A stretch of DNA of 53,541 bases, counting the filler, from Bipalium vagum (lineage: Eukaryota): NCBI GenBank assembly GCA_037834085.1. It is 3 parts of 3 records of this genome, joined end to end, with 100 filler letters (N's around TTAATTAATTAA, not from the genome) between each part and the next. Parts side by side here need not be neighbours in the genome. Positions count along the whole stretch, not along the records: positions 1 to 18,946 come from JBBMKC010014982.1; 2 more parts are not named here. One strand, 5' to 3'. How positions within the stretch are numbered: position 1 is the first letter of the stretch; every line of letters starts with the position of its first letter. Shown here one piece after another: positions 143 to 18,946 of the stretch. The position numbers were made by a program, and so were the translations under genes. The notes beneath the pieces were generated by a model. That model had not been told where the DNA came from, did not search any database, and was given only the letters and a program-made list of their open reading frames with translations.

Positions 143-3100
143 GTTAGTTACATTTATATCGGTTGATAAGCTATCAAGATTCATTTCGAAAATTATATTT
201 TTTAATAACAATTATTCAAAAAAATTAATTAATTATTTTAAATAATAAATATTTAAACAAATTAAAACTATTTAAAAAATTTTAATCCTCACAGTTATTA
301 TTTTGAGATAGTTCATCAAAAATATTTATTTTATTACTAATTAATTGTATTTTATTTAAATTTCATTTGATTTTTGATGAGATCAAAAAGTATCAAAGAT
401 TTTGTAAATCTAACAAACATTTGAAATATCAGAAAGAATTATTGAAAATTGTATAGGTATTCTTATGAAAAAGAACTATATAAAATTGGATAATTTTAAT
501 TTTACAAGATTTTGAGTTTTGGAAAATGCAAAATTAATAATGTAAAGATTTATATGTGATCAAATGATTCTTGAATTAAAAAACCTGAGTTTTGATGTCT
601 AGATTACAATATTCAAGAAATTAATGATTTTTTAATAAACTACAAATAATTAAAAAACATCATGGTTACAATTTAATCATAAAATATATATGAATAAAAA
701 AACTTAGCAATGAACCATTTGATGATAAAAAATAATTGAAAATAATTCAATTGTTACATGTCTACATGATCATAGAATAAAATGGGATAAATTTAATAAA
801 TCAGTTAATTAATACATTGAATACAAAGACAAACTAAATATTTGAAAAATGAAGATATAATAATTTATACCATATGAATATTAATTTTTTTTATTTAAAA
901 AATAGGAAACCTAAACTTCAATATGGATACAGAGAAAGTTATAAATAATAAGTTTACTTTTCAAATAAAAACAAAAGAATTTCATAAATGTTTTCAGATA
1001 AACCCAATTACGGATTTATCCAAAAAATAAATAATTGTAAATGTTATCACAAAGCCCATATTAAAAGTCATAGAAAATTTCTTGAATATAGAATAAAATA
1101 TAATGATTATCATAAAAATAGCAAAAATATCCAGTGTTATAATTTAAACAAAATTTATGTACTAGTTTCAATAGAACTTTAAGGGAAAAAAGAGAATTTA
1201 AACATTGAGAAAAGAATTATTTGGATGTAGTTTTGATTTTTTAATTAATTGGTTTCAATTTCAGTTTTATAATGGATTGACTTGGAAAAATCGAGGAAGG
1301 TACTGGTATATAGATCAATTTTAAAAATTAATTTACATAATAAAATGCATTTGTATTTTGTTATAATTGGAAAGAATTTTTATCAAAAAGTAATAAAGTA
1401 GATTATTGGAAATATATAATGACTGTTCTTGTTACAAGAATTTATGGAAATGAAAATAAGTGATAGAGCTTTTAATGTTCAAACAAGGAAAAAAGAGATT
1501 GAGAATAAATAAAGCAAAGAAATATAGTGAAAATGAATTATTAAAGATTATGAATTTCTTTTTCATATTTCTTAATAAAATATTTAGCTGTAATTTCTTG
1601 AAAGATATAATAAATATTTAAATTAACTTGTACTTATAATTTTTATTTTATCTTGAATAAACAAACTATTATTCTTACCATCATCAATATATGATTCTTT
1701 AAAAGCAATAAATATGTATATTGGTTTATTTGGTACATTCTATAATTATAAATTTTGTGTTTTACCTTCTGTAAGATTTCTTTCTATACATTGTCTTGAT
1801 GATGGCTTACAATATATTTTCCATTCGTTATTCTACTTTTTAAGTTTATGTCTGATTCGGAATTTAAAATTAATTCTGGAATTAATATTTTGGATTTATT
1901 ATTATTGAGGTACATCAAAAAAAACTTTTGTTTAAAATAATTATTTAATTCAATTAACTAACATTTTTAAAATTTTAAAAGTTAATTTTGAAATACATAA
2001 ATATTATGGTAATTTAGGTATTATTATATAATATAGAATATTGAAGCAAGACAATTTAGATATTTCTATCCATATATAAATAGTAAACAAATTTTTTCAT
2101 GAAAACCAGTGTATAAGTTTTTTGTTGGATCGAAATATTTAAAACAACTCTATAAAAATATGTCAATTGTGTACCAAACATTTAAAACTGAAAATGAAAA
2201 AAGGTTTGTGAAAATGCGAAATTATAAATACTACAAGACCTCTATTTTCAATGTTCACAGGACTAAGGGTTTAAAAAGGTTTATGGTTGCAAACCTTTGG
2301 TATTCAAAATCTTCTACGACGTCAATTATGGCACAAACCACTTGCAATCTAAATACATAAATCTGTTATTCAGACTATTCTGTTTGCCTTTCACTATTTT
2401 TATGTCCATATATAACTGGGGTAGTTTGAAATCGATCTCCTGAAGACTTGGATCATTCCAAACGATCACAATTTCATTTAGTATTTTTAGACTTTTCCTT
2501 AACAAGGTGTCTTTTAAATGATAGTACGACTATAGTAAACTGCTCATAGACATAGTTTCCTAAAAGGCTATGCATAAATTCACAAAAACTAAATTACACA
2601 AAAACTTGACTCAAAAATCCTCGGAGAATGGAATCAGTGATCGTTGTATTTTCACACGTTCTAATCATAAGATTGAAGCTCTATTTTAATCCTAAGCAAT
2701 CACAAGCAATTAAATAATATTATTTCTATCTTCCTTTTGGATCTCGTCTCTAATTTTCTGGAATAGTTAAGAGCAAACCGTCAAGTTTTGCAGATCAACT
2801 GAAGCGATAAAGGAAAGATAATATCTCAGTTTCAGCGGAAAATTATGAGCAATTTAAAATTTGAGATTTTGTTTTTTACTAATAAGACGAAATAACGATA
2901 TCAAAATTTTGTCGGTAATTGTTTTTGTGGAAAAAACGAGCTTGAGAGGATTGTTGTCTGTTTGATATAAGGACAATTTAAATTTTAAAATTTTTCAATG
3001 GAAAACTTTGACCTAAACGTCAAAATGACGCAATTCTTTATTGCTTCCAAGATGAAATCGTTTTTGTTTTCCTTTTGTCATTGATATATTTTTTGAAGAT

Positions 3101-3326: not shown

Positions 3327-3415
3327 AGTTATAGGTCTTCTTTAGTACACATTGAAAAGACGTCAGTTATAAAAAGTATTTATTCAAACAAAACATAATT
3401 ACGTAACACGTAACT
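3327..3415 (-). repeat. 3' LTR (89 bp)
   Basis: Near-identical to 4817-4905; preceded on the minus strand by a polypurine tract (tccccctttaa on +). Confidence 0.88.
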
Positions 3416-3425
3416 CCCCCTTTAA

Positions 3426-4379
3426 TTAAGACTGATGCCATTTCTTCAGCCATTCAATTCTCCTCAGTTTGATTCCTTCTGGACCTGTCAGTTCAACTTG
3501 ATGTGGGGATAGGAAGTTTGTAATCTTGTTGGAAATCATTCTTCTTTCTGTTTTGCGGTCTTTCCGTAGCAATTCTTCTTCTCCAATTGAAAACTCACGT
3601 CGACCTCTAATATCCGTTTCGAAGTTCTTCATTGTATCGGCTGCAATATCTAAGGTTCTTCGAGCTTCTCTAATGATCTCAGTATTTAAATAGGTTTGGT
3701 CACGGCTGCCAGAATGAAGATTGACTTTGTAGCTCAATACAATCTCACATGGAGAAAACTTTGTTGAGCTCTGCTGAGTAGCATTGATACTAAACTCAAT
3801 TCTTGGGAGCAATTCGTGCCAATCTTTTTCTTGACAACCGCTCTTTAGAGATGTGGTAATCATATTTGGAATCGTTCAGATTGCTCGCTCGACTAAACTG
3901 TTGGACTGGTGCTGGTAATGTGAATTGAATTCACACTCGATATTGAGGTCTCTCCATTTTTGTTGAATCCAAGAACTCTCAAAGTTCTCTATCAAAGAAC
4001 TCTTCGGCTTGCCAAATCCATAAATCCAATGGTTCATTATTGCCTTGAAGATTGATCGATCATCAAGTTTGGACATTGCGCATAGACTCACTAGTTTGCT
4101 AAAACGGTCAATAATGACAACCATGTATTTGTGGTGTGCCGCTACTTTTTCCATAAAGGCTACATCTACCACGATCTGCTCTAAGAAATGTGAGCTTCTT
4201 CTCGGGATAAGGATTTCTTTAGTGCGCGTTTGATCAATTTTTCTCTTGGCACAAACATCACAGGTTTTTAAACATCGTTTGACTGAATTCCACATCGATG
4301 GCCAATAGTAATGATCTTTCAGATAGTTGAATATTTTCTTGCTACCAAGATGACACAGGTCGGCATGAATCTCCATCAC
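3426..4379 (-). pseudogene. Gypsy integrase (HHCC zinc finger, catalytic core, C-terminus), disrupted
   Basis: ORF 3876-4379 has HADLCHLG...YYWPSM...CDVC, VDV, IDRFSK and QSNSLVER. ORF 3426-3863 has W..LLP.IEFSINAT..SST.FSP. Confidence 0.9.
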
Positions 4380-4816
4380 AAATTCATCAATATATCTTTC
4401 TGGGATAATCCAGAATTAAAGATATCATTCATTAAATTCCGAATACGGATCTCAAAAGTTGCAAATCGTTCATCCGAATTTTGTCTAACTTCTGACAATT
4501 CGCAAATTAAATCGGTTATTGGTTTCTTCTTCATAAATGTGTCAGCAAAGCACTACTTGGCTTCTTCATTTGCAGTTGCTTCTGTCTTGAAACTCTTCTA
4601 CAAGGTTGAGGCTTCGTCGGATAACAGCAAATAAAATACGCCGACAAGGCATAAGTCATTTATACTGAGCCATTCTTCAATATCTTTCAACCATCTTTCG
4701 GCTTTAGTAGAGCTTCGTTTGATTTGAAATCCCAAAATTTCCTGTGCATTTTTTGGTAATGCATCCATGACTAATTATTTTTTATGCTTTTGGTGTACAT
4801 TTTCGGTGTGATCGCC

Positions 4817-4905
4817 AGTTAGTTCTTCTTTAATACACATTGAAAAGACGTCAGAGTTATAAAAAGTATTTATTCAAACAAAACATGATTACGTAACACG
4901 TAACT
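4817..4905 (-). repeat. 5' LTR (89 bp)
   Basis: Matches 3327-3415; followed on the minus strand by a TGG-initiated PBS. Confidence 0.88.
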
Positions 4906-5158: not shown

Positions 5159-5318
5159 NNNNNNNNNNNNNNNNNNNNNNNNNNNNNNNNNNNNNNNNNN
5201 NNNNNNNNNNNNNNNNNNNNNNNNNNNNNNNNNNNNNNNNNNNNNNNNNNNNNNNNNNNNNNNNNNNNNNNNNNNNNNNNNNNNNNNNNNNNNNNNNNNN
5301 NNNNNNNNNNNNNNNNNN
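5159..5318. other. Assembly gap (N run)
   Basis: Run of N. Confidence 0.99.
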
Positions 5319-5488
5319 TTGTTTAAGCGTGAACACTGAGACATTTTACATTTAAGACTGTCTGATCACCGTAGTATTTGTGATAGTTGAAAAAATTCGT
5401 AGTTTTATTGATTTATTCATTTGCAAACACATATTTACAAAAATGAAGAGGTCAGTAAAGTTTACGAGCTAAGTGTTACTTGTAAAAC

Positions 5489-6193
5489 TTATTTTAAATA
5501 TTTCTTAATTTTAGACGAATTAGAAAAATGATTATGCTGGAAATGTTTGCGAATATTTCTGAAATCCAGGAGTCCGGTACTGTATGTAGAAAATCGATTT
5601 TTGAAACTTCTTTCTTTTGCTTTTGAACATTTGTTACAGATGAAATAATCATTTTTATTATCTTCAAACAATTCGAAATCAAAATCTTCATGACCTACCA
5701 ACTTTTAATTGAAATTATCAGATATGTTTTTAATAACTTCATCGTAAATTCTATTTCATAAAAATTTTCTTTTATCATGAGTTACTACTGCAATTGTATG
5801 CTTTTGGATTTTCGGTGGGAAATGTTTTTTTAGATGTTTGTATACATTTTGTAAAAATAATTTACTATTTTGTGATATTTTAAATTTTGTTCCTTGACAA
5901 TTTTTTGTAGTTTTACTACATTTGTTACAAATATAGATTCCATAAGAAAAATTACACTTTTCGGGTAACTCAATAGAAAAATTTTTATTTGCAACGAAAT
6001 CATAATTGATAAAATACTTAGGAAAGGTAACTTCGTTTTCTTTGTTTTTATCGTCTATTTTATCATTCGAACTTGAATTGTCTAATTTCTTAGGGCTTGT
6101 CTTAGCTTTATTTTCCTTTCTAATTTTACTATACACGGCATCGTCAATTTCTTCAACATTTATGTTTAAATTACTATTTATTTCTACAAACAT
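5489..6193 (-). pseudogene. Unknown ORF pair, each with a CxxC...HxxxH zinc-finger-like motif (same frame, two intervening stops)
   Basis: YICNKCSK...NVYKHLKKH in 5756-6193 and FICNKCSK...NIRKHFQHNH in 5489-5701. Confidence 0.45.
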
Positions 6194-6569
6194 ACATTCT
6201 ACTTTCTTACTTCTGTGTTTTAAAATAATTTAAAATGCTTTATTAAATGTAGTTAAAATTAGATTTTTTTATTTAAATAAAATCGTATTGGATAAAAATA
6301 AAGACTATATATCGATTGATTTTAAATAAAAATTTTATTATTTTTATTTAATTAAATCAATATTTTAGTCATTTTTATGTATTTTGTTATTTATATTTTA
6401 TTTTTCAGCACATAAAAATTACTTGAAAACCCAATTAACGAATGGTCTTAAAGTGTTGACACAAAATATACTGACAAAAAGAGCATTTAAAATCTTGAAA
6501 TGAAAAATCAATTTTATATAGACATAGATCACTTATACCTTACTTATTGGTGTAAAATAAAATGTTCCT

Positions 6570-7235
6570 TTTTAAATTGCCCATGATTCTCAGCTGAAAC
6601 AGAGATATTATCTTTCCTTTACCATTTCAGTTGATCTGCCAAACTTGCCAACAATAGATTTGTTCTTAAATATTTCCAGAACATTAGCGACGAGATCCAA
6701 AAGAAAGCTGAGAATAATACTATCTATTTCGACATGAATTGCTTAGGATTGAAATCGAGCTCCAATCTCAACGATTGGGATTTGTGAGAATATGGAAAAC
6801 CGTTTCAAACGAAGTTCTACCTGATTCTGTCTCATTGGAATTCCGATATATTCACAACAGAAAACTGTCAACGGCGAATAATTGAATGGGATCCCGTGTT
6901 GAACACTGATTCCGTTCTGTGAGGATTTTCGAGTAAAGGTTTTGTGTAATCAATCATTCGAGAAACGAAGCTGGAACGGAATTTATGCATAGCCTTGTAG
7001 GAAACCATGTCTATGAGCAGCTTACTTTGGTCATACTATCATTTAAAAGACATATCTTGTTAATAAAAAGTCCTGAAATAATAAATGGAATTCCCTATCT
7101 TCATTCAATTGTGATCGTTTGGAATGATCCAAGTCTTCCGGAGATCGATTTCAAACTACCTCAGTTACAAATGGATATAAAAATAGTGAAAGGCGATTAG
7201 AATAGTCTAATTTAAAGATTTCTGTACTTGGACTG
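6570..7235 (+). pseudogene. Exostosin-like (EXTL3-type, GT64) pseudogene fragment
   Basis: WDPVL...GF...AGTEFMHSLVGNHVYEQLTLVILSFKR...INGIPYLHSIVIVWNDPSLP...IKIVKGD*NSLI*RFL parallels EXTL3 'FDPVLP...GKEFQAALGGN..REQFTVVMLTYER...LNGLPYLNKVVVVWN...NSLNNRFL'. Multiple stops. Confidence 0.8.
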
Positions 7236-7698
7236 CAACTGGTTTGTACTGTAATTGAAGTCGTATAAATTTTTGAAAGCCAAAGGTATTCCACCATCAA
7301 CAACGATATATAACAAAAAATTATTAATTAACAATTAATTGTTATAAAAGTCAGACTAAATAAAATTTTATTTAAAAATTATAATTTCTTGTCCATCATG
7401 TTATACAATTCAGCTTTCTTTATATGAATGTGATTTTCAATTTTGCGTATCTGAACCACCAGCTTCTTTTTTTTCTATATATTCCTTAATCAATTTTTTA
7501 TTGCGATTATAATTGTTTCTTTTAAATCTTTTTAAAATTCTTAAATCTTTTAGTTCTTCCTTAATTTCTTCTCTCTTTTCTTAAAAAAATATAAAATAAA
7601 TTTATTCTTACTCTCGATTGATTGAGATTTTTCTATTTCAAAATTTCCACTCATTTAAATATTAAAACAAAGTTTTTTGCAATTCGTGAAGTTTTACT

Positions 7699-8887
7699 TC
7701 ACAGAAAGCTTCTTTGAAGCTCATTTTCATAAAATCGTCCGATTATTTATTTTCCATTTTTATCCATAATTGCATAAACAATTGGAGTTGTAAAATAAAT
7801 TTTATTTATTATAAAAATTTCATATGTCCATTTTGCTGTGTATCCCAATATGAAATTTAGGTTTAGATTTCAAAATTTCAGAAGTTGAAATGGAAACTTT
7901 GTGCACTTTTGGCGCTAGAGACGTAGACTCGTTTCCGAGAGGTTCCCGCGTATTTTTTTCTTTTTCATTATTTTTATTTTTAGCTTTACAGGGTGATTAC
8001 TCGCTTCTTGAGGAGAAATACTAATTGATGAATGAATTTTGTTGTTATAGAAATTTATTAAATTTGGTAAAAGATGTAACCATTTTCGATTTCTCTGTTC
8101 TTTTAAATCTTTCAATGACAACTGCTTTTCCCTCATTATCTGTTGAGTAAATTTCGATCTCATTATCATCATAAAAATCTCCAAATATTTTATTATAAAA
8201 TTCTGTTCCTTTATCAACCCAAAGTTTTCCTGGTATTCTATTAGAATCTTCAAATATTTTATCGAAAGCATTTGTAATTTATTTTCTTGATTTATTTTTT
8301 AAAGGAACAGCAAAAGCAAAACAAGTATATAAATCTATAACTGTTAGAATTATTTTATAATCTCTTTCCTTTGGGACAAATGTTAAATCTGCAGACCAAA
8401 TATCAGCTTTGTTATTAACTTTTACTTTTAAGAAATTTTTAGTTTTTCTAAATTCTTTATGAAGTTCATTAACTAATTGTATATTTTTTTCAGGAGGAAG
8501 AATTTTTATTTTTTCATATTGTTTTTCTTTAGCAAGAGTCTTTGAAGATCTTTCTAATCTTAATCCTAATCCTAAAGCTATCTTTCCTTTTTGAGTCGTC
8601 ATAGCCGCTCCAAGAGCAATTTTTACTCGCATAATTAATTTTATAATTGCTCTTTCAAGTTTTTCTCTTGGAGTTGGATTTTGAATATTGTTCATTTCAT
8701 GAATCATTTCAACATCTGCAACATGTCTTTCTTTTAAATCTGTTGACATATATTTTACATCGTGTTTCATTGCTGCTTGATCAACTCGATTTATTGGAAT
8801 TGGAGGGATATTTAATTCACCTGTTTCATTATAATTATTTGTTATTTCATTATAGTTTTCTAAGCGTTTGTCAACATTTGTTCCAGG
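7699..8887 (-). pseudogene. PLA2 (exon 2) fused in frame to a Polinton-type DDE integrase, with a premature stop and frameshifts
   Basis: PGTNVDKRL...PINRVDQAAMKHDVKY...RHVAD (PLA2 HDxxY), then ELHKEFR...IWSADL...ILTVIDLY..FAFAVPLKNK*ITNAF...LWVDKGTEFYNK...IYSTDNEGKAVVIERF; W..LLP.....YNNKIHSSI..SP; GYTAKWTYEIF...FYENELQ. Confidence 0.85.
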
Positions 8888-9213
8888 TAGAACATCTTAA
8901 ATATTTCTATTCAAGCTGGACTATATCTTAAGCTATCATTGAAATTGATTAGATTTCTCAAGACCACCTCCGTTTAGTCTCTAAACCTTCTCCATATTCT
9001 TATCAAAATGAACATAGGAACCTGGCTGTGGATTGTCCAATTCTTGATCGTAATTACTTTCGAGATCAATCATTACCTGAGAGCCTACAAAAGATTTCTT
9101 AATTGAAGTAGTAGAAATATTTTGTGGAGTTTCCCGCAATTTGAAGGTGTTGCATTTTTTAAGTTTAAAAAACACTAGCAGACTTCTATGAAAAGTCCAC
9201 TCGAGCTCAATTG
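8888..9213 (-). ncRNA. Group I self-splicing intron (IC1-like), 326 nt, no homing endonuclease, partly degenerate
   Basis: Minus strand: P AAATTGCGGGAAA (9142-9130); Q AATCCACAGCC (9034-9024); R GTTTAGAGACTAAA (8986-8973); S AAGATATAGTCC (8929-8918). P3 CACCTTC/GGAGGTG; P7 GAGACTA/TAGTCC; P9 CTTGAATA-GAAA-TATTTAAG. The 5' exon ends in U, with IGS GCTCG. Removal restores the reading frame HNFTG|PGTN. Confidence 0.9.
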
Positions 9214-9420
9214 ACCCGTAAAATTGTGAACTGGATTTGTTTTGTTTAAAGGATTTAAAGATTTTAAATATAATTCACATGGGTATTTTCCAGTTGTAAA
9301 TTTATTAAAAAATTTATTATTTGTAATTTGTGATTGAATATCTCATCCTGTTTTTATAAAAAAAGATGGAAATCTTTCTTGAATGTTTTGAATATTTATA
9401 TTTATATTTTTAGTCGTTGA
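9214..9420 (-). pseudogene. Exon 1 of the PLA2-integrase ORF
   Basis: Manual translation ...SFFIKTG*DIQSQITNNKFFNKFTTGKYPCELYLKSLNPLNKTNPVHNFTG, in frame with exon 2 after intron removal. In-frame TGA at 9345-9343; true start unknown. Confidence 0.7.
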
Positions 9421-9690
9421 TAAAATTTTTTCAGTCGTTGCTTTTTATTGATGTTATTATTATTTTTAGTCGTTGTTTTTATTCCTAGATATCGTTGATT
9501 TTTCGTCGTTGTTTTCCTTGACATCGTTGAATATTTTATTCATGTATTTTTGTATCTTCATGATGACTTTTATTTTTTTTATTAATAGATTTATCCCAAA
9601 TTTCAGAATACCATTTTTAGTGAATTTTTTAGTGATTTTTTTTAGTAATTTATGACTTAAAATGTATATTATATTTTTTACATTTGTATG

Positions 9691-9910
9691 ACACAAAATG
9701 TACCCTGTTTATCAACACGTTTTTTAGTGAACAAAAACAAGCCCTGAATTTTAAAAAAAATTTATTTTTTTTCTATTTTTTTTAATATTTTTTATATTTT
9801 AAGTAATTTTGTATAATTATTTTTTGTTACCAAAAGTATATTTTTAACATTTTTTAGAGCTGTTTTTGTTCATGAAAAAATGAGGGGAATAAACAGGGTA
9901 CACTTTGTGT
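9691..9910. mobile_element. MITE-like inverted-repeat element (~220 bp)
   Basis: 22-bp terminal inverted repeats ACACAAAATGTACCCTGTTTAT / ATAAACAGGGTACACTTTGTGT (1 mismatch). Internal IR gaacaaaaaca/tgtttttgttc. ATG on both flanks (possible 3-bp TSD). Confidence 0.65.
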
Positions 9911-9927
9911 ATGTGGGCTCCCTTGGA

Positions 9928-10565
9928 TGTTGGGATATTGCAAACCAGGCCCCTCTGAAAAAATTGAGTTCACAATCTCTTAACTGCGGTTGTCTGGGAG
10001 ACCTATCACATATACCTAACGCATATCACTTCTCCCCCGGAGGCGGTACTTCCCCTGCCAAGGAAAAATATTGCTTATATATATCTATTATCTTATCATT
10101 ATTATCCAATTTGTTAAAATCTTGTTATTATTATTTTCTGTATACCCCGAATCCTCAATCTTATTACAATCTCGTCTTCGTGCACAGTCCCTTTCTTAAT
10201 ATCTCCCATGATTATTGTACTCTCAACTTTCGATCGTATGTGTTTATATGTGTTCTCTGAATATATTATATCCTTTTATTGTGGTTTGAGTTTGGTGTTT
10301 TTCCTGTCCTCGATTGGCAGGTATCGACTGCAATGGGGCACTGAGATCAGTTTACTCTCGATGGTCCACAGAGTGATTTGTCCCGACCCTAACGTGCATT
10401 AAGTTTTATATTTTGAGTCGTTTGGGACTCCAGGATCTGTCACATTGCCATCACCTAGAGACTATGTGAATATGACATTTACTCATTTTACACAATTTTC
10501 TCTACTTCTGTACTTGATACAGATAGAATGTGTATATGCTAAATAAAATCTATTTAAATCCAACG
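9928..10565. repeat. Possible solo LTR
   Basis: Starts TGTTGG, ends CCAACG, AATAAA near the end, GC-richer than flanks; no TSD seen. Confidence 0.3.
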
Positions 10566-10969
10566 AAATATTAATTTGTTTCATTTTCGTACTAAAAATA
10601 ATGTTTCATTGTATTCCATCACCTTTTTAATTGATATGATGGTTAAACTATTCTTTTTGATAGGTACGAACAGAATTTTGAGACAGAGTGTAAAATTATA
10701 AATTATTATAATTATAATTATTATACTTTGCTTAAACCTAACATTATTAATATTATAATTTTAAACCACAGATTTTTTAAACCCAATTATAATTATTTAT
10801 GATTTTAAATACAAAACATAAGTTACTCCCTTAAGATGATGTTTACTAAAAATTGGGTCTTTAAAATAATTGATTACCTTCATTTTTAATAGTAAAAGTT
10901 CGTTAACTTGAAGTCTAAATTAATTTGTTTAAGTACATTAACCTAATTAATCACTTTTACAGAATTTAA

Positions 10970-13900
10970 ATGGAAAATATTGATAAAATTGAAAAGTAAA
11001 TTTTAATTTAATGATATTCACATTTACAATATATACATAGGTATCCATATATAGATAGTTATTGGCCAGTTTGGCTTAGTTGGCGGAGAACCTCTTTTCA
11101 ATCTCTTTTATCTTCTGAATCAAAACTTTTAGGATGTAATACAATTATATATAAATATTATTACTTCTACATCACTTTTAGACGTTAGGAATAAATGTAA
11201 ACTCTTTTTTGTTCCTATAGCAAGTAATACTCAATATCTGCGTAGCTTGGTCGCAAGTCAATTTGAGAAAACTGAAGGCACAGAAAAGGATGATACAATG
11301 CCAATTTTAATGCTTCATGGACTTGGTGCTGGTATTGGATTGTGGTGCAAAAATATTGATGCGATATCAGACAATAGAAAACTTTATGCTATTGATTTGC
11401 TTGGATTTGGTTTTAGTTCGAGATCAAAGTTCCCAAAAGATCCTACTCATGTTGAAAATGCTTTTGTAAAATCCATAGAAGAATGGCGCAAGGCTCTCGG
11501 TTTGTCAAAGTTTATATTACTTGGTCACAGTTTAGGTGGATATTTGGCTTATTCGTATGCTGTGAAATATCCTGAAAAGTAAATTATATTATTTGTAGAA
11601 GACTATTTTATCTATTGATTTTTCATTTTAATTGTTTATTGTTGCTTCAGAAGACTCTCGTTACAGTAATATTATAGTATCTGCTTAATCTGTTTTTGTC
11701 TTTATTGATAGAAATTAATATTATTAATAATAAGGTAATCCTATGCTTTGGTGGCGCAAAAATAGGTCAAAATTTTGCATTTCGCTTATATAGTATAATT
11801 AAAAATAATTATAAAGTAGACCTATGCAATTTTATTTCTGATTTTTAATTTAATTTAATTCGTTTTAACATTAGCACTATATATATATTAGAAATATATT
11901 CATTACCCAATTACATATAATCTTTGATCGTAGTCCATGGTTGTTTAATTGATTATATTTCTTTAAATAATTAATAAAAATATTTAAATTCTTTAGAATT
12001 TATATTTCAACTCCATAAAGTAACACTCAAACTTATAAAAGAATCACTAATGATATTACAAATTTTTAATTATTTTAAAATAATATTAAGCTAAAATTTG
12101 ACCTACTTTGGCGCCACTAAAGTTTAGGATTAACAATAATATTATTATGTAACCTTTTAGAATTTATGTTAAATGTTTTAGTAATTGGTTGCAACAATAT
12201 TGATTACGCTTAAAACAGAAACGTCATTAAGTAATCAGACAAATCATTATTGTTCAATAACTGGTATAATGGTTATTATTACAATGTACTCTTGTTAAAA
12301 TATGACAATAATTCGTTAAGGTGTTTTAAAAAATTAAAATTCTTCAAACGATATGTTAATTAATATGTATTATCTCAAATTTTTATGTAAAACTGTTTAA
12401 AATTATCGCAATTTTAATAATTTTCACGGATAATAATAAATAAAATTATTGATAATAATAATAATAATAATAATTAATTTTTTAAAGAAAAAAAATATTT
12501 TAAACAAATAAGTTTTTATATTTGAACTTTTAGAAAGTACAATTATTTTAATATAAATTATATCTAAGGTATAATTATACAAAATTTGAATGTCACATTT
12601 GAAATTCTGAATTATTAAAATTCATATCAAAATGATTTAATGTCACTTGAATTTAATGAAGATTGTAATCAAATATGTGATTTTCAAATACTTTATTTAA
12701 ATAATGAGTGATTTTATTTAATGTTAAAAAATGTATCAAAATATTATATAGTCCTTTTCAAATTTAATGAACACTTTATATTTCACTTATAAAAATGATA
12801 TATAATACTTAGTTTTTATTGGGTCTATTTATGAAAATATAATGAGAATGCTTTTAATGTTTCGCATAATTGTTAATTAAACAATGCTTTCTTGAAATAT
12901 AAAACCTATATTATAAGATAACATTATTTATAAAATAATTGTTTTTAGTCAAATTTATTGGACAAATTAAAATTTTACCGCTTGTAATCATTATTTTGTG
13001 AAATATACTGAAAGATAGTCGGGGGATGTAGATCAGCGGTCAGAGCTGAAGGTCCCGGGTTCGAATCCCGGTATCTCCGATTAATTTTCAACTAACATAT
13101 TTGAAGTCAAAATTTTAGACCTATTACATGAAAAGCACAATTTGTGTAGAAATTAGATATTTTATTTCAAATAAATTGAAAGATTGATATACTGTTGTCT
13201 AAGATGTTTGAAGTGTGAAGAACGACAATTTATTCGATTAAGAAAGGCAATAAACTTATAATGGAGGAATCGAAAAGTATTAATAGTTAAAAAAAATTTA
13301 AAAGATGCAGAAAGCAATAAACAATTTGAAAAAGTTCCTCTGAAACGTATAGCGAATAGTCTTCTTTAACTCTTTATTCAAAATTTTCAAAAATATTTTT
13401 ACCTGAACGGCCGTTTTTTTTATAGTCGTAGAAATTTGTCTGCAATCACTACTGGTTTGTCTAAGTTAAATTTCTTTTCGTCACTCCAGATGACCTGCTT
13501 CCATTCGTCGCCTAATGCTACTTTAGTTTTCCCCCATTGCAAAAGCTTCAATTTGTGTTCAACTTTTATTGGTAGTTTCACCATCATTTTTTGGTATTTT
13601 AAGACTTTGGAATTGTTGATAACACGGCGGATAGTCTCTTTGCTTACGTTTAAGTTAAGTTCATGTTAAATTGTCGAGTTTGAATCGATTTTTTGCTGGC
13701 TTTGCGAATAATCAATCTTTTAGTTTTGGGCGAAATCTTTGTCTTTGGGCCAGGCTTACGATTTTTGCTCCATTTTTCAAATAATAACTTATGGAGCTTT
13801 CATTTCTGTTTATCTTATTTCCTAACCATCTGTTTGATTTTCTGGCTTCGTGGTAGGCCTTAATCATCCCTTTCTCAATGTCGGACATTTTGCTTAAATT

Positions 13901-16884
13901 TGGCATGGTAAGAATTTACTAAACATTATAAATTATAATTATTAATTATCACTTATTATATATTGTAAAAATTTGAAGTATAAAATTAAAATTGATAAAG
14001 AAAATCAGAATTCAATTTAGTGCGACAATTAATTATGGTCAACAAAAATTTTGAATTATATAAACAAATTAAATTTAGTTAAATTACAACTTAATTTAAA
14101 TAATACGATGCTGTTCAAATGAGTTCTTATATCTTTTACTTTCATCAATTTTATGAAAATTTAATTAGTTTAAAAATAATCAAGATTTCTTGATTTTACA
14201 AGGTGCGGCAGTTAATATGTGGCGCACTGTATAATCACTGGAATTTAATAGATATCAATAGTAAGTAATTCAAATATTCTTAATACTCTTAATAATTCTA
14301 AATACTCTTAATATTGTGTTAACATTTGGTTTCAGTGGTTCAACTAAACATATTTGATAAAGGACGAATATGTAGAATGCTAGAAACCGGATTGACTATT
14401 CGTGAAGTTGGGGAAAAATGAATTTGTCTACAAGAACTGTAGAAAATGGTGGACTCAGTACAGAGATCAAGGAAATTGTGATCGCCAAAATGGATCTGGA
14501 AGACCAAAAATATCAGGTGCAGACAGGATGCCAATTTGATATTGAAGGTTAAGAGAAACAGGTTCAAATCAACGACACATATGGTCAGAGAATGGAAGAT
14601 AGAAAATGATGTCAAATGCTCAAATGAGACAGTCAGGCGCAGGATTATTATGGTAGGATATCGTTCGTATCGCGCAGTTGTGAGAATTCCACTGACTCTT
14701 ACACATCGAAAAAATCGTTTAGCCTGGGCAAAGGAACATCTAATAGAATGGAGTGATGAACAATGGAAATCTGTATTATGGACAGATGAATCCAGCTTCT
14801 CGCTAGATTTCAACGATGGTAGAATACAAGTCAGGCGTTTGAAAAACGAAAGATTTGCTGACTGCTGTATTAAACATCATGATCGGTATGGCGGTGGAAG
14901 CCTCATGATCTGGTGTGGCATATCGTGGGAGGGTGGAACGACCGCAGTTATTATTGATGGTTCATTAACTGCTGCTCAGTATCTGAATGAAATTGTTAAC
15001 CAGCACATCATTCCAAATATTGCTGAACACAATCTTATGTTGCAGCAAGATAATGCTAGGCCTCACACTGCTAAAATAGTGACTGATGCTTTGCATTCCT
15101 CAAATGTTCAAGTTCTTCCATGGCTTGCACAATCTCCTGATATGTCACCTATCGAACATGCTTGGGATGATCTTGGGCGACGTGTCAGAGAAAATTATGA
15201 CCAGACTGCCACTACTACAGCAGAAATGGCAAGCAGATTAAAAGAACAGTGGCAGCAAATTCCACAACATAATTTTCAAAATTTGATTGCAAGCATGATG
15301 ATGATGATGATTACATGAATGTAGTAGCAAACGGGGATATCTTCACTTGTGTAATGATTAATAAAATTATTTTACAGAAATCTTATTTTTCATGTATGTA
15401 GTACTTTTTTGTGGAGGATTATATTATTATTATTCTTTTTGATTTGTTTTGGGTCTCACCATATGCAGACTAATAAACCTATCTAAATAGTTTTTTTGAG
15501 AACGTAATAATTTACTCTTGTGATTTAGTGTACGTCATTTAATTCTTGCTGATCCATGGGGTTTTAGCAAGCATGAAATGAGAAAAGATTCGATTAGAAG
15601 AAGTTTATTGGCCCGTATGATAATTGGATTTGGAAATTTATTTAATCCTCTGGCAATGGTTCGGTTTGTTGGTCCTCTTGGACCAAGTCTTATTAAAAAA
15701 GCCAGACCAGATTTAGGGATTTATTTTAAAGGTGATGAAAATGTAAATTATTTTTTTATGGTATAAAACTGAACTTTTTTTTAGGAAGACAATTCAGTGG
15801 AACCAGATGATTTATTCAATTATATATATCACTGTAATGCCCAATATCCGAGGTTTTATTTTTCTGTTATCGATTGACATAGTGCTGAAACAGGATATTT
15901 TAGTGGAGAGATGGCTTTCAGAAGTTTGCATTTCAATGTCGGCTGGGCTTATAATCCAATGCTTGATAGGGTTCATTCATTGGATAAATCTGTTCCAATT
16001 ACTTTTATTTATGGCGAACATTCTTGGATGGATAAGTGGCCGGCTTTATACTTTTTAAAGGAGCGACAAGATTCTTACGTAGATTTGCAAGTATGATTAT
16101 TGGCTTAATTATCTTATGATATTTATTTATTTAGTTGAAAGATAATTATTATTACCTTGGTTATCACATTCATGCTTATCTGCAACTAATATTATTATTA
16201 ATTTATTTTTTCAAAATAGTATGTATAATTGTAAAGTTTTTTGTAAAACAGTTCGTATATAACTGATAAATCTATTTTATTCATATTATTTCTTAAATCT
16301 CTTTTTGAAAACAATAAAAATTGATGATTCCCAATATGATCTCTAAATATATATGGATTTTTTTTAATAACTTCTGAAAATCAAAAAATCTAAGGGTTGA
16401 TTTAATTTTAATACTAAAATATAATAAATTTTGAAATCTTTTCAGAATTTATAGGTTTTTTAAATATTTTTACTCACTTCTACTGTATTTACATTTTTAA
16501 TTTTGATTCAATTTTTTCATTGGATAATCTTTATATTTTTTAATATTTACTTTCAATTTCAATATTTCAATTTTTTCAATATTTATTTTATTTCTTATTT
16601 ATTATAATTTTTTATTTTAAATTTTATTTCTTCATCTTTTTTAAAATTATTTTTTCACTGTTTAATAAAATTTTTAATTGATTGTGATTTTTAACTAAAA
16701 TTGAACTTTGTTCTTCTAGGTTATTCCGGAGTGTGGTCACCATATTTATGTTCAAGATTCGACAACTTTTAACCAGACAGTTAATCAGATTTGTGATAAA
16801 GTAGATACTAACTCTGATATTGCGGAAAGTGCAGAGAGAGATAGTAAATACGAAATTTGGTTTCAAAAGTATTTTAAACCTTAG
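10970..16884 (+). CDS. ABHD4: ABHD4/ABHD5-family alpha/beta hydrolase, ABHD4-like ((lyso)-N-acylphosphatidylethanolamine lipase-like). Exons 10970-10995, 11041-11135, 11182-11578, 15529-15742, 15785-15852, 15904-16090, 16720-16884
   Basis: The spliced GT-AG exons keep frame. Motifs: LHGLGAGIGLW, AIDLLGFGFSSR, LLGHSLGGY (nucleophile Ser, versus Asn in vertebrate ABHD5), HLILADPWGF, YHCNAQYPSGE, ITFIYGEHSW, GHHIY. Exon 1 is less certain. Confidence 0.9.
11736..12132. mobile_element. MITE in ABHD4 intron 3 (possibly piggyBac-type)
   Basis: ~40-bp imperfect TIRs taatcctatgctttggtggcgcaaaaataggtcaaaatttt / aaaatttgacctactttggcgccactaaagtttaggatta; TTAA at the right end, GTAA at the left. Confidence 0.7.
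13022..13079 (+). pseudogene. tRNA-Ala-derived sequence lacking the anticodon arm
   Basis: Acceptor stem GGGGATG/TATCTCC with G3:U70; D arm TAGATCAGCGGTCAGAGC; T arm CCGGG-TTCGAAT-CCCGG. The anticodon stem-loop is absent; TTTT lies just downstream. Confidence 0.75.
13400..14229 (-). mobile_element. Truncated Tc1-like element (5' TIR, HTH, first catalytic D)
   Basis: TIR TA|CAGTGCGCCACATATTAACTG on the minus strand at 14229; MSDIEKGMIKAYHE HTH; WKQVIWSDEKKFNLD in another frame. Confidence 0.75.
14340..15420 (+). mobile_element. Tc1 (DD34E) transposase, disrupted at the N-terminus; intact core ORF 14536-15318
   Basis: W.SVLWTDES, GGGSLMIWCGI, QQDNARPH and SPDMSPIEHAW, with exactly 34 residues between D and E. 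TIR-like end gtacttttttgtggaggattata. Confidence 0.92.
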
Positions 16885-17117
16885 AAGTCAAGTGACCTCA
16901 TATATCTTTTTTACGAATTGAAGATTATTTAATGAAAATAGATTTTTAATATTTTGTTAACCTTAACTATTTTAAGCTTTGTCAAACCTTCGATGAGATT
17001 ATGGAAGTTAATAGATAATTTTATCAATAAATAAATGCTGATCTTTACTATTTCTGACTTTATGTATTGTTTGTTATTTTATCATTTTAAAAAAATTTAA
17101 AGTTACCTACCCAAATA

Positions 17118-17476
17118 CCGGGGTTTTCCGAAAATAAGCTCTTCCGATAATAAGCTCATGGGTGTATTATCGGAAGGGCTTATTTTCGAAAAAAAACTAA
17201 TCAATTATGAAGGAATGGATGAGGACTTGCTTTTCAACAAGAGGAAACTACTTATCTAACTATTAACTTATTTCGAATGTTAAATCTGATGACAATCATT
17301 TAAAACAATAAATTACTATTTGAATTTTAACTATATTTAATAAAGATAAGAATTTTTATTTTTGAAAATATGCCCAGGGCTTATTTTCGGAAGGACTTAT
17401 TTTTGGAAAATTTGGCACATGTTTTATAGATTATTTTCCGAAAATAAGCCCTGGGCCTATTTTCGAAAAACCCCGG
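17118..17476. mobile_element. pogo/Tigger-type MITE
   Basis: TA|CCGGGGTTTTCCGAAAATAAGC ... GCCTATTTTCGAAAAACCCCGG|TA, with multiple internal ccgaaaataag/cttattttcg motifs. Confidence 0.85.
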
Positions 17477-17599
17477 TAATTCTTTTTTTAAATATTTATT
17501 ATTAATATCAATTAATTATAACAACCCATTTTATTTTTATTTACATCAGACAATTTTTCCATTAAACTTAATGTTATTTTATATTGATGGAAAATATTT

Positions 17600-18520
17600 T
17601 TTCAACTTCCATTGCATAACAGTGCTCAGAATATATCTTTAGAAAACATTTTACAATTGTCAACTTCTGCGATCAATTTATATAAAGGCGATTCTTGAAT
17701 GTTAATTCCTTTAACTAGTTCTTGTAAGGATGATATTTCATCTTCTACTTCAGCTGCAATTATTTAAAAAATCTGTGGATTGTCTCAAACTTAACTAGTT
17801 TCAACCACTTGGAAATAAATTTGATTCCATCTAATATCGTATATTTTACTACATTTATATATTTCCTTGAATCATTGAACATATTAGGTGTCATCCAGGC
17901 TTTGTACTGTTCATTTTAAAGATCTAATGCCTTAGTATCTATGCCTCTTAACATCGATTTAATTTTGTTTTTCTATTAAAGGCCCCAAAATTTCTGCTTC
18001 CTGAACATTTTAGCAAGCTGTAATTCTGTTTTGAGATTTTTTTCGTGCTGTACAATTTTTTTGATGCCTAGTGTTTTATCAGGCAGTATTTTTGACAAAT
18101 AGCTTCGCACCATTGAATGATTTTTTTCTTTATAATCTTCAATTATAAAATTGAGATTTTCTTTCTAATTTTGAATTATATTGATATCAATCATTGATAA
18201 TAATCACAGTCAGACCTAGTTGGGAAATCCAAAATGTGTTTATAAACAGGGTTTCTTAAAACGGGTAATTTCGATTGCATCACATACTGATATTACATAA
18301 TACATAGAAAATTAAATTTTATTTAAAATGATTAAATAGTATCTTGTATCATTTAATCATGCTAATTTATTTTAATTTTTCCTTCAAAATTCATGAATAT
18401 ATTTAAGATATTTTCGTCACGTGATGTTTCAGTCGATCGTATAAATTTCTTGATAGTATCAAGAGAGGCTAGGACTTCTTTCTTAGCTGGAATATCTGTT
18501 TGTTTCTTTCGTAGATTTTT
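17600..18520 (-). mobile_element. Highly degraded pogo/Tigger transposase remnants
   Basis: KAWMTPNMFND at ~17870-17905 and PAKKEVLASLDTIKKF near 18450-18490 resemble Tigger motifs. Confidence 0.35.
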
Positions 18521-18946
18521 CTTCTTTTATTATCCCTTAATTTGATAAGTTCCACAATATCTTTTATCTATTGATAACGAAGTCCCTTATAACAGGGTTT
18601 AGGTGTATTATCCACTAAACTTAACATAATTAGAAAATTTGATTATTTAGAAATATCTTTGACAACTATAGCAATAAAAAAGTTTTTCAGGCATCTCAGC
18701 TATAATACAATACCATCCACATGTTTTGGGCCACCTCTAAAATTTCGATAAAATGATGAATATATATAATTATAAGTACTTTAATCCTGTCTATATTTAA
18801 ATATATGATAGAATATGTTGAAGTATTTGTTTCCAATCAAAAATTCCCAAAGTAAAATTTTTGTAAATTTAGAAAAACCGATTTGTTCAGAAACATCAAT
18901 TTTTAAGTCATTTTGAATACAAGACTAAAACGTCAATAAAATATCT

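What the first reader, a model, noticed from the sequence alone, without database searches (positions are those of the whole stretch)
8888..9213. Group I (IC1-like) self-splicing intron inside a Polinton PLA2 gene in an animal nuclear genome
Seen in sequence: a 326-nt minus-strand insert splits the codons ...CAC AAT TTT ACG GGT | CCT GGA ACA AAT, so precise removal restores HNFTG-PGTN, the calcium-loop motif of parvovirus/Polinton-type PLA2. The insert has no GT-AG ends (it starts CA and ends TA). It carries, in correct order, P (AAAUUGCGGGAAA), Q (AAUCCaCAGCC), R (GUUuAGAGACUAAA) and S (AAGAUAUAGUCC). Pairings can be drawn by hand: P1 exon CGGGU with IGS GCUCG, giving the U.G pair at the 5' splice site; P2 GUGGACUUUU-CAU-AGAAGUCUGC; P2.1 GUGUUUUUUA/UAAAAAAUGC; P3 CACCUUC/GGAGGUG; a P5abc-sized extension containing GAAA; P6 GCC/GGU; P7 G(A)GACUA/UAGUCC; P9.0 AG/CU; P9 with a GAAA tetraloop. 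Established knowledge: these are IC1 consensus elements. Nuclear group I introns are known from rDNA of fungi, algae and protists and from some large DNA viruses; in animals they are known essentially from mitochondria of sponges, cnidarians and placozoans. Inference: a Polinton/adintovirus lineage carries ribozyme introns in protein-coding genes and has brought them into a metazoan chromosome. I am not aware of this being described, but cannot check the literature.
Basis: partly seen in the sequence, partly recalled or inferred. Interest (0 to 1): 0.95.

Follow-up and report, generated by a model that had tools for sequence, protein, structure and literature searches.

The report
Group I intron in Maverick-type integrase gene
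A genuine self-splicing-type (group I) ribozyme intron sits in the phospholipase part of a dead, virus-derived integrase gene on what looks like an animal chromosome. Group I introns have been reported in such viral elements only from protists, and in cell nuclei otherwise only in ribosomal RNA genes.

Summary
Rfam's group I intron model matches window 9204-8897 (minus strand) over its full length at 80.8 bits (cut-off 50, E 1.8e-19). P1 to P9 can all be paired, with a U.G pair at the 5' splice site. Removing 8888-9213 puts the two flanks in one frame across a G|P-G-T motif. In 172 related proteins that motif reads straight through, with G at 98% and P at 91% of the two flanking columns.

The host gene is not a stand-alone PLA2 gene. 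It is a PLA2-like domain fused to an rve integrase, a family with at least 678 members. This copy (7702-9360) is dead: one frameshift, about five in-frame stops and no in-frame start. It is also solitary, with no other Polinton gene in the window. It lies between an EXT-like exon and an alpha/beta-hydrolase gene that has GT-AG introns.

The closest relatives lack the insert, so the intron is optional. Its last base is A, not the usual G; one natural precedent that still splices is on record. The IC1 subgroup and the animal origin are plausible but untested. Group I introns in polinton-like viruses of protists were reported in 2025. I found no report for animals.

I left out fetching the DNA of related copies.

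The parts
8888..9213 (-). Group I intron, 326 nt. It has no open reading frame with database relatives, so no homing endonuclease gene.
   Evidence: RF00028 at 80.8 bits, E 1.8e-19, full model. Helices checked base by base. The internal 64-codon ORF has no homologue.
9202..9218 (-). P1: the last five exon bases (9218-9214) pair with the internal guide sequence (9206-9202). A U.G pair sits at the 5' splice site.
   Evidence: 5/5 pairs.
9152..9200 (-). P2 (9200-9178) and P2.1 (9175-9152), two 10-bp hairpins.
   Evidence: 10/10 pairs each. Both are recovered by the unconstrained fold.
8965..9149 (-). P3 (9149-9143 with 8971-8965), enclosing the P4-P5-P6 scaffold. P4 is 9138-9133 with 9032-9027, P5 is 9128-9124 with 9040-9036 and carries an 83-nt extension, and P6 is 9026-9024 with 8987-8985.
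   Evidence: P3 7/7, P4 5/6, P5 4/5, P6 3/3. The extension folds no better than shuffles.
8918..8981 (-). P7 (8981-8975 with 8923-8918, one bulged A in the 5' strand). It forms a pseudoknot with P3 and encloses P8 (within 8961-8930).
   Evidence: P7 6/6. P8 has two alternative 6-bp drawings. cmscan marks its own P8 alignment as poor.
8888..8917 (-). P9.0 (8917-8916 with 8890-8889), P9 hairpin (8915-8896) with a GAAA loop, and an 8-nt tail that ends in A at the frame-restoring 3' junction.
   Evidence: P9.0 2/2, P9 8/8, loop GAAA, last two bases UA.
7702..9360 (-). PLA2-integrase gene of Maverick/Polinton type, broken. Apart from the intron it has one frameshift, about five in-frame stops and no in-frame start codon (counts only).
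   Evidence: tblastn of full-length relatives gives outer bounds 7702-9360 and up to 268 summed bits.
8621..9228 (-). PLA2-like domain (parvovirus VP1 type), split by the intron inside its glycine loop. The His-Asp pair is present downstream.
   Evidence: PF08398 at 24.9 bits (cut-off 23.9) on the downstream flank, profile positions 17-80 of 80. Relatives score up to 38.5 bits. Translation.
7702..8407 (-). Integrase catalytic core (rve) and C-terminal part.
   Evidence: rve scores 19.6 bits in the window, below Pfam's cut-off of 32.6, and 36-43 bits in relatives. tblastn reaches the last residues of P0002 and P0004.
6937..7197 (+). Neighbour: an exon-like ORF of an exostosin-type glycosyltransferase (GT64). 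It lies in the right arm of an inverted duplication (2279-2886 with 6543-7301).
   Evidence: PF09258 at 24.2 bits here and 30.7 bits in the left arm. Repeat shown.
11133..11579 (+). Neighbour: an exon of an alpha/beta-hydrolase gene, followed by a GT...AG intron of about 4 kb that holds Tc1/mariner copies. Probable further exons lie at 15524-15763 and 15878-16093.
   Evidence: Abhydrolase_1 at 72.9 bits. Splice signals read. Transposase domains.

Best explanation
This is a canonical, ORF-less group I ribozyme intron with P1-P9, P2.1 and an extended P5. It sits between the codons of the conserved glycine loop of the PLA2-like domain that forms the N-terminal part of a Maverick/Polinton-type integrase.

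In a living element the transcript would fold. A free guanosine bound in P7 would attack the 5' splice site, which is held by the 5-bp P1 with its U.G pair. The freed exon would then attack the 3' junction, which is positioned by P9.0. The two halves of the loop would be rejoined in frame.

The intron is optional in the family. It most likely invaded the gene while the element was a replicating virus and was carried into the chromosome when the element integrated.

The copy in this window is a fossil. The gene is solitary and broken, and it lies between ordinary host genes in AT-rich DNA that looks metazoan.

Shown: the ribozyme fold, the pairing, the exact junction, intron-less relatives, and the decay of the gene. 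Inferred: past splicing activity, arrival by integration, and the animal host.
For: Ribozyme:
- The covariance-model match is full length and in the range of bacterial introns.
- All core helices pair, and the MFE fold recovers four of them.

Junction:
- The insert length is not a multiple of three. The two flanks match relatives in two frames that meet exactly at the junction.
- In 172 relatives that reach the junction, the residue before it is G in 98%. After it the residues are P in 91%, G in 78% and T in 98%. The window's last five upstream residues are each the commonest in their column.
- The closest relatives are the P0007 cluster, about 65% identical, with five members. They read straight through, on contigs of 539-788 bp that are too short to hold the insert.

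Host gene:
- The PLA2 plus rve family has 678 members, some with a chromodomain. Many lie on megabase contigs, and the only named hit is from a coral.
- The gene has one frameshift and about five stops, and no other element gene is nearby.

Context:
- The neighbours have GT-AG introns and animal-type transposons.
- The same gapless stretch, 5319-18946, holds both the gene and the hydrolase exons.
Against: - The last intron base at the only frame-restoring junction is A, not the consensus terminal G. No alternative junction with a terminal G can be combined with a credible P1.
- P4 and P5 each carry one mismatch, and P8 is ambiguous.
- No P10 can be drawn.
- No second copy of the intron was found. 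The ORF probe found nothing, there is no phage match, and the best prokaryote similarity is only 49 bits.
- Splicing was never observed.
- The host taxon was not determined.
Confidence: 0.8

Rival explanations
1. The contig is not from an animal. It comes from an AT-rich protist or fungus, or it is a contaminant or chimeric assembly. The intron would then be one more case of the protist polinton-like-virus introns already described.
For: No tool gave a taxon. The window's ORFs are absent from the protein collection. The transposase search gave unnamed best hits and only distant arachnid names. Many family members come from environmental metagenomes. PLA2-bearing Gosseviruses infect protists.
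Against: The intron-bearing gene lies between a GT64 exostosin-type exon and an alpha/beta-hydrolase gene with a 4-kb GT-AG intron full of Tc1/mariner copies. A Gypsy-type integrase and a tRNA-like repeat lie elsewhere in the window. There is no assembly gap between the gene and the hydrolase exons. Base composition is uniform across the junctions. Family members occur on megabase contigs and in a coral.
Confidence: 0.15
2. The intron entered the gene after the element had already integrated. It would have homed or reverse-spliced inside the host nucleus, not arrived with the virus.
For: Close relatives lack it, so the gain is recent relative to the family. Only one copy is seen.
Against: No source of group I introns is known in nuclei outside rDNA (PMC3679873). 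The intron encodes no endonuclease. A dead, probably untranscribed gene is a poor target for reverse splicing. Polinton-like viruses are already known carriers.
Confidence: 0.04
3. The insert is a group I-derived sequence that never spliced from this gene. On this reading it was simply a disruptive insertion that killed the gene.
For: The terminal base is A. No P10 can be drawn. The gene is dead.
Against: The guide sequence pairs 5/5 with the upstream exon and has U.G at the site. P9.0 fits the 3' junction. Exact removal restores both the frame and a motif conserved at 91-98%. A natural intron with a terminal A self-splices fully (PMC3679873).
Confidence: 0.03

Closest known systems
Group I introns (RF00028) in polinton-like viruses integrated in protist genomes: Paulinella micropora, Rhodomonas lacustris, Desmodesmus armatus (PMC12220804, 2025)
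   Same: The same ribozyme family, sitting inside a protein-coding gene of a Polinton-related viral element that is integrated in a nuclear genome. The size is similar (309-376 bp there, 326 here).
   Different: There the hosts are protists, and in Rhodomonas the host gene is a short unannotated one next to the capsid gene. Here the host gene is the PLA2-integrase gene, the flanks look metazoan, and the copy is a solitary fossil.
Nuclear rDNA group I introns of subgroups IC1 and IE in Tetrahymena and myxomycetes (PMC3679873)
   Same: Core architecture P1-P9 with P2 and P2.1. An all-ribozyme form without an endonuclease gene. Optional among close relatives. The Diderma L2066 intron also ends in A and still self-splices.
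   Different: Those interrupt ribosomal RNA genes of microbial eukaryotes. The review states that all known nuclear group I introns do so. This one interrupts a protein-coding gene of a viral element.
Group I introns in protein-coding genes of phages and giant viruses (general knowledge; giant-virus self-splicing introns are mentioned in PMC3671162)
   Same: A ribozyme intron placed in a highly conserved motif of a viral protein-coding gene.
   Different: Those genomes are not integrated in animal chromosomes. There is no sequence match to phage records.
Adintovirus PLA2X gene and the PLA2 domain of Polintons (PMC8502044, PMC4642659)
   Same: The same parvovirus-type PLA2-like domain (PF08398) in Polinton-class elements.
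   Different: PLA2X is fused to an adenovirus pX-like domain and belongs to the virion module. Here, and in at least 678 relatives, the domain is fused to the integrase. No intron is reported in PLA2X.
Mitochondrial group I introns of cnidarians, sponges and placozoans
   Same: Group I introns in animals.
   Different: Those are organellar. This insert sits precisely inside a nuclear-type viral integrase gene, so it is not a transferred piece of mitochondrial DNA.

Membership tests
Group I intron (Rfam RF00028) | Covariance-model score above the curated threshold over the whole model | tested here: met
   80.8 bits against 50, E 1.8e-19, positions 1-253 of 253. Bacterial introns score 50.8-100.9 bits.
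Group I intron (Rfam RF00028) | Catalytic core: P3-P8 and P4-P6 stacks, with a P3/P7 pseudoknot and a G-C pair next to a bulged base in P7 (guanosine site) | tested here: met
   P3 7/7, P4 5/6, P5 4/5, P6 3/3, P7 6/6 with a bulged A. P8 is 6 bp in two alternative drawings.
Group I intron (Rfam RF00028) | [quoted passage not shown] | tested here: met
   5/5 pairs ending in U.G.
Group I intron (Rfam RF00028) | Terminal guanosine at the 3' end. This is a consensus feature, not an absolute one: Diderma L2066 ends in A and self-splices (PMC3679873). | tested here: not met
   The last base at the only frame-restoring junction is A. I treat this as a deviation of this copy, not as exclusion from the family.
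Group I intron (Rfam RF00028) | Exact excision restores the host reading frame and a conserved motif | tested here: met
   Tested flank by flank. Relatives are contiguous across the junction.
Group I intron (Rfam RF00028) | Self-splicing activity | not testable with these tools
   No transcript or biochemical data were available.
Subgroup IC1 | P2 and P2.1 present, with no P7.1/P7.2 insertion | tested here: met
   Two 10-bp hairpins lie before P3, and P8 follows P3 directly.
Subgroup IC1 | Complex scaffold domain (structured P5 extension) | tested here: inconclusive
   An 83-nt extension with one 6-bp hairpin and GAAA is present. Its fold is no better than shuffles, z = -0.56.
Subgroup IC1 | Match to a subgroup-specific model or alignment | not tested
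   No subgroup models or reference IC1 sequences were on hand.
Parvovirus-type PLA2-like domain (PF08398) | Profile match above the curated cut-off | tested here: met
   24.9 bits against 23.9 on the downstream flank alone. Relatives score 27.8-38.5 bits.
Parvovirus-type PLA2-like domain (PF08398) | Glycine loop and His-Asp catalytic pair | tested here: met
   The loop is split by the intron, with column shares of 98, 91 and 78% in relatives. His-Asp is read. Enzyme activity was not tested.
Maverick/Polinton element | Retroviral-type (rve) integrase | tested here: met
   tblastn to full-length relatives gives 204-268 bits. rve scores 36-43 bits in the relatives. In the window itself it scores 19.6 bits, below Pfam's cut-off of 32.6.
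Maverick/Polinton element | Protein-primed DNA polymerase B, capsid proteins, packaging ATPase and protease in the same element | tested here: not met
   No such domain was found in any ORF of 45 codons or more between 5319 and 11300. Host-type exons lie within 0.5 and 1.8 kb of the gene.
Maverick/Polinton element | Terminal inverted repeats bounding the element | tested here: not met
   The only long inverted repeat (2279-2886 with 6543-7301) carries GT64 exons and does not enclose the gene.
Animal nuclear genome | Taxonomic placement of the contig | not testable with these tools
   Only indirect signs: GT-AG introns, GT64 and hydrolase genes, Tc1/mariner and Gypsy pieces. The searches gave no taxon.

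The most novel reading that the evidence does not exclude
A lineage of Maverick/Polinton-type viruses of animals carries a mobile, self-splicing group I intron in its PLA2-integrase gene. Integration of such viruses would then have placed group I introns in metazoan nuclear chromosomes. That would be the first case outside rDNA and organelles, and a ribozyme intron in a transcript presumably made by RNA polymerase II.
Probability: 0.45. Interest if true: 0.8.

Novelty: new member of a known kind. Interest (0 to 1): 0.6.

Why it matters
A 2013 review states that every known nuclear group I intron interrupts an rRNA gene of a microbial eukaryote (PMC3679873). A 2025 survey added polinton-like viruses lying in protist genomes (PMC12220804). 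If the contig is metazoan, this locus extends the carrier role of Polinton-class viruses to animals. It also shows a ribozyme intron inside a protein-coding gene on an animal chromosome. The intron marks a lineage of elements and is optional among close relatives, so it could date and trace virus-to-host transfers. The work also brings out a large, seemingly unremarked family in which the viral PLA2 entry domain is fused to the integrase. The copy at hand is a fossil, so the finding is a lead to living carriers, not evidence of function in the host.

Tried and rejected
1. Probing the protein collection with the 64-codon ORF inside the intron, to count other intron copies without fetching DNA, found no candidate.
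2. blastn of the intron against phage records gave no match.
3. Exact look-up of ten window ORFs found none in the collection, so it gave no copy number and no host name.
4. A search with the Tc1/mariner transposase, meant to name the host, gave a best hit of 74% identity with no name and only distant arachnid names.
5. PDB sequence searches gave nothing for the PLA2-integrase flank and only generic hydrolases for the neighbour, so 'ABHD4' is not confirmed.
6. I considered the long inverted repeat 2279-2886 with 6543-7301 as element termini. I rejected this because both arms carry GT64 exons and do not enclose the gene.
7. I enumerated alternative splice junctions that end in G by frame arithmetic. 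Each needs a 5' site for which no guide pairing with U.G can be drawn.
8. Three related ORFs (P0159, P0160, P0396) begin one codon before the junction, which could mark intron-bearing relatives. However, ORF starts are not clearly enriched at the junction, so this is only a lead.
9. The P5 extension is not supported as a folded P5abc.
10. ARAGORN finds no tRNA at the Rfam tRNA-like hit.
11. A pattern scan of prokaryote genomes gave 98 loci that share the R and S letters. The best overall similarity is only 49 bits, so there is no close prokaryotic relative.

Full report
**Observation**

The minus strand of 8888-9213 is a 326-nt insert. Rfam's group I intron model (RF00028) matches 9204-8897 over all 253 model positions. 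The score is 80.8 bits against a gathering score of 50, with E 1.8e-19. The only other Rfam hit in the window is a tRNA-like stretch at 13022-13079.

Nine bacterial group I introns, found with a pattern taken from this intron's own R and S blocks, score 50.8-100.9 bits in the same scan. The window's score is therefore ordinary for a real intron.

I checked each helix base by base:

| Helix | Standard pairs | Note |
|---|---|---|
| P1 | 5/5 | U.G at the 5' splice site |
| P2 | 10/10 | |
| P2.1 | 10/10 | |
| P3 | 7/7 | |
| P4 | 5/6 | one mismatch |
| P5 | 4/5 | one mismatch |
| P6 | 3/3 | |
| P7 | 6/6 | one bulged A |
| P8 | 6 bp | two alternative drawings |
| P9.0 | 2/2 | |
| P9 | 8/8 | GAAA loop |

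A free-energy fold that knows nothing of the model recovers P2, P2.1, P3 and P9, with z = -2.86.

**The junction**

Every search was made flank by flank, by reference.

- The downstream flank carries a parvovirus-type PLA2-like domain (PF08398, 24.9 bits, cut-off 23.9, profile positions 17-80 of 80). It then runs into the start of an rve integrase core. The missing first sixth of the PLA2 profile is what lies upstream of the insert.
- A search of 1.84 billion representative proteins with the downstream flank gave 294 relatives.
- In the closest relatives the upstream-flank residues and the downstream-flank residues are directly contiguous. These are P0007 and four cluster members, about 65% identical. 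Their contigs (539-788 bp) are too short to hold a 326-nt insert. Intron-less close relatives therefore exist.
- In 172 relatives whose alignment reaches the junction, the residue before it is G in 98%. The residues after it are P in 91%, G in 78% and T in 98%. The window's last five upstream residues are each the commonest in their column.
- The intron thus sits in the most conserved motif of the domain, and exact removal restores both motif and frame.
- The neighbouring hydrolase gene uses GT...AG introns. The insert does not.

**The host gene**

Full-length relatives of 410-470 residues have PLA2 plus rve, and some have a chromodomain. The family has at least 678 members. Many lie on megabase contigs, others on 20-40 kb metagenome contigs. 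The single named hit is from the coral Oculina patagonica.

In the papers I read:
- Polintons encode PLA2-type lipases (PMC4642659).
- Adintoviruses have a PLA2 fused to a pX-like domain (PMC8502044).

I found no description of the fusion to the integrase.

In the window the gene spans 7702-9360 on the minus strand. It is dead. Apart from the intron it has one frameshift, about five in-frame stops and no in-frame start codon (counts only).

**Surroundings**

- No other Polinton gene was found.
- About 0.5 kb beyond the gene's 3' end lies an exostosin-type GT64 exon. It is part of an inverted duplication, 2279-2886 with 6543-7301, which I first took for element termini and then rejected.
- About 1.8 kb upstream of the gene begins an alpha/beta-hydrolase gene. 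Its roughly 4-kb GT-AG intron holds Tc1/mariner copies.
- A Gypsy-type integrase fragment lies at 3426-4379.
- The only assembly gap in the piece is 5159-5318, so the gene and the hydrolase exons are on one gapless stretch. I did not fill that gap or look its letters up.
- Base composition is uniformly AT-rich.

This looks like a metazoan chromosome, but no tool gave a taxon. Nothing suggested a human contig.

**Deviations of this copy**

- The last base at the only frame-restoring 3' junction is A, not the consensus terminal guanosine.
- P9.0 fits that junction. Junctions that end in G need a 5' site without a credible guide pairing.
- One natural intron with a terminal A (Diderma L2066) self-splices fully (PMC3679873). 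The deviation therefore does not settle whether the copy could splice.
- P4 and P5 have one mismatch each, P8 is ambiguous and no P10 can be drawn.
- The 83-nt P5 extension contains a hairpin with GAAA but folds no better than shuffles.
- IC1 remains a plausible label that I could not test.

**Mechanism**

The pairing implies the standard two-step pathway. Guanosine bound in P7 attacks the site held by P1. The freed exon then attacks the 3' junction, rejoining the glycine-loop codons.

The intron has no endonuclease gene. Its one internal ORF has no relatives.

It is optional among close relatives, and polinton-like viruses are known carriers of such introns (PMC12220804: 53 in Paulinella, 44 in Rhodomonas lacustris, 2 in Desmodesmus). 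The most economical reading is that it invaded the gene in a replicating element and came into the chromosome with it. Activity, route and host are inferences.

**Comparison and novelty**

The review PMC3679873 states that all known nuclear group I introns interrupt rRNA genes. Searches for group I or self-splicing introns together with Polinton, Maverick or animal genomes found only the protist report. I therefore file this as a new member of a known kind. If the contig is indeed animal, both the host gene and the host lineage are new.

- no look-up of the contigs of P0159, P0160, P0396 or P0004;
- no scan of the viral or metagenome collections with the gene or with the intron.

I could not tell whether these are virus-like elements of animals, and the bar on fetching holds by any road. 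Three related ORFs begin one codon before the junction. That may mark intron-bearing relatives, but the enrichment of starts there is not clear.

2. An earlier count gave open-frame bounds that reveal where one break of the gene lies. My reasoning did the same in places. I have deleted nothing and do not repeat the places here.
3. One search printed the two commonest residues for nine columns round the junction. I use them only as shares.

Noticed in passing
window 2279-2886 and 6543-7301: An inverted duplication of about 600-750 bp at about 77% identity. Each arm carries an exon-like ORF of an exostosin-type GT64 glycosyltransferase (PF09258, 30.7 and 24.2 bits). One arm may belong to a live gene and the other to a pseudo-copy.
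   Followed up: partly
window 3332-4905: Gypsy-type integrase fragments (zinc-binding H2C2 domain plus rve, 3426-4379, minus strand), bracketed by 86-nt direct repeats at 94% identity (3332-3415 and 4820-4905).
   Followed up: no
window 13423-13915 (-) and 14482-15315 (+): Two Tc1/mariner transposase remnants in opposite orientation inside the roughly 4-kb intron of the alpha/beta-hydrolase gene. The best database relative of the longer one is 74% identical.
   Followed up: partly
window 13022-13079 (+): A tRNA-like sequence (Rfam tRNA, 37.2 bits) with most of the anticodon arm missing. ARAGORN calls no tRNA. It may be the head of a tRNA-derived repeat.
   Followed up: partly
window 5492-6229 (-): Two adjacent ORFs, each with a similar Cys-x2-Cys ... 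His zinc-finger-like motif. Neither has a Pfam match. They lie just right of the assembly gap at 5159-5318.
   Followed up: no
proteins P0002, P0009, P0155-P0273: The fusion of the parvovirus-type PLA2 domain to an rve integrase, sometimes with a chromodomain and PF18930, is a large family of at least 678 proteins. It is found on contigs from metagenome size to chromosome size. None of the papers I read describes it as a fusion.
   Followed up: partly
proteins P0159, P0160, P0396: Three related integrase ORFs from a Logan contig and two JGI contigs begin exactly one codon before the intron's junction, although their contigs have room upstream. They may be intron-bearing relatives. Their DNA was not fetched.
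   Followed up: partly
L066 4634-7762: A contig of an unclassified bacterial MAG carries four full-length group I introns within 3.1 kb. The same scan reported no rRNA match there. One of these introns is the best prokaryotic sequence match to the window's intron (49 bits).
   Followed up: no
window 17124-17193 and 17359-17469: Two AT-rich palindromes of 70 and 113 nt at 78-86% self-complementarity, downstream of the hydrolase gene.
   Followed up: no
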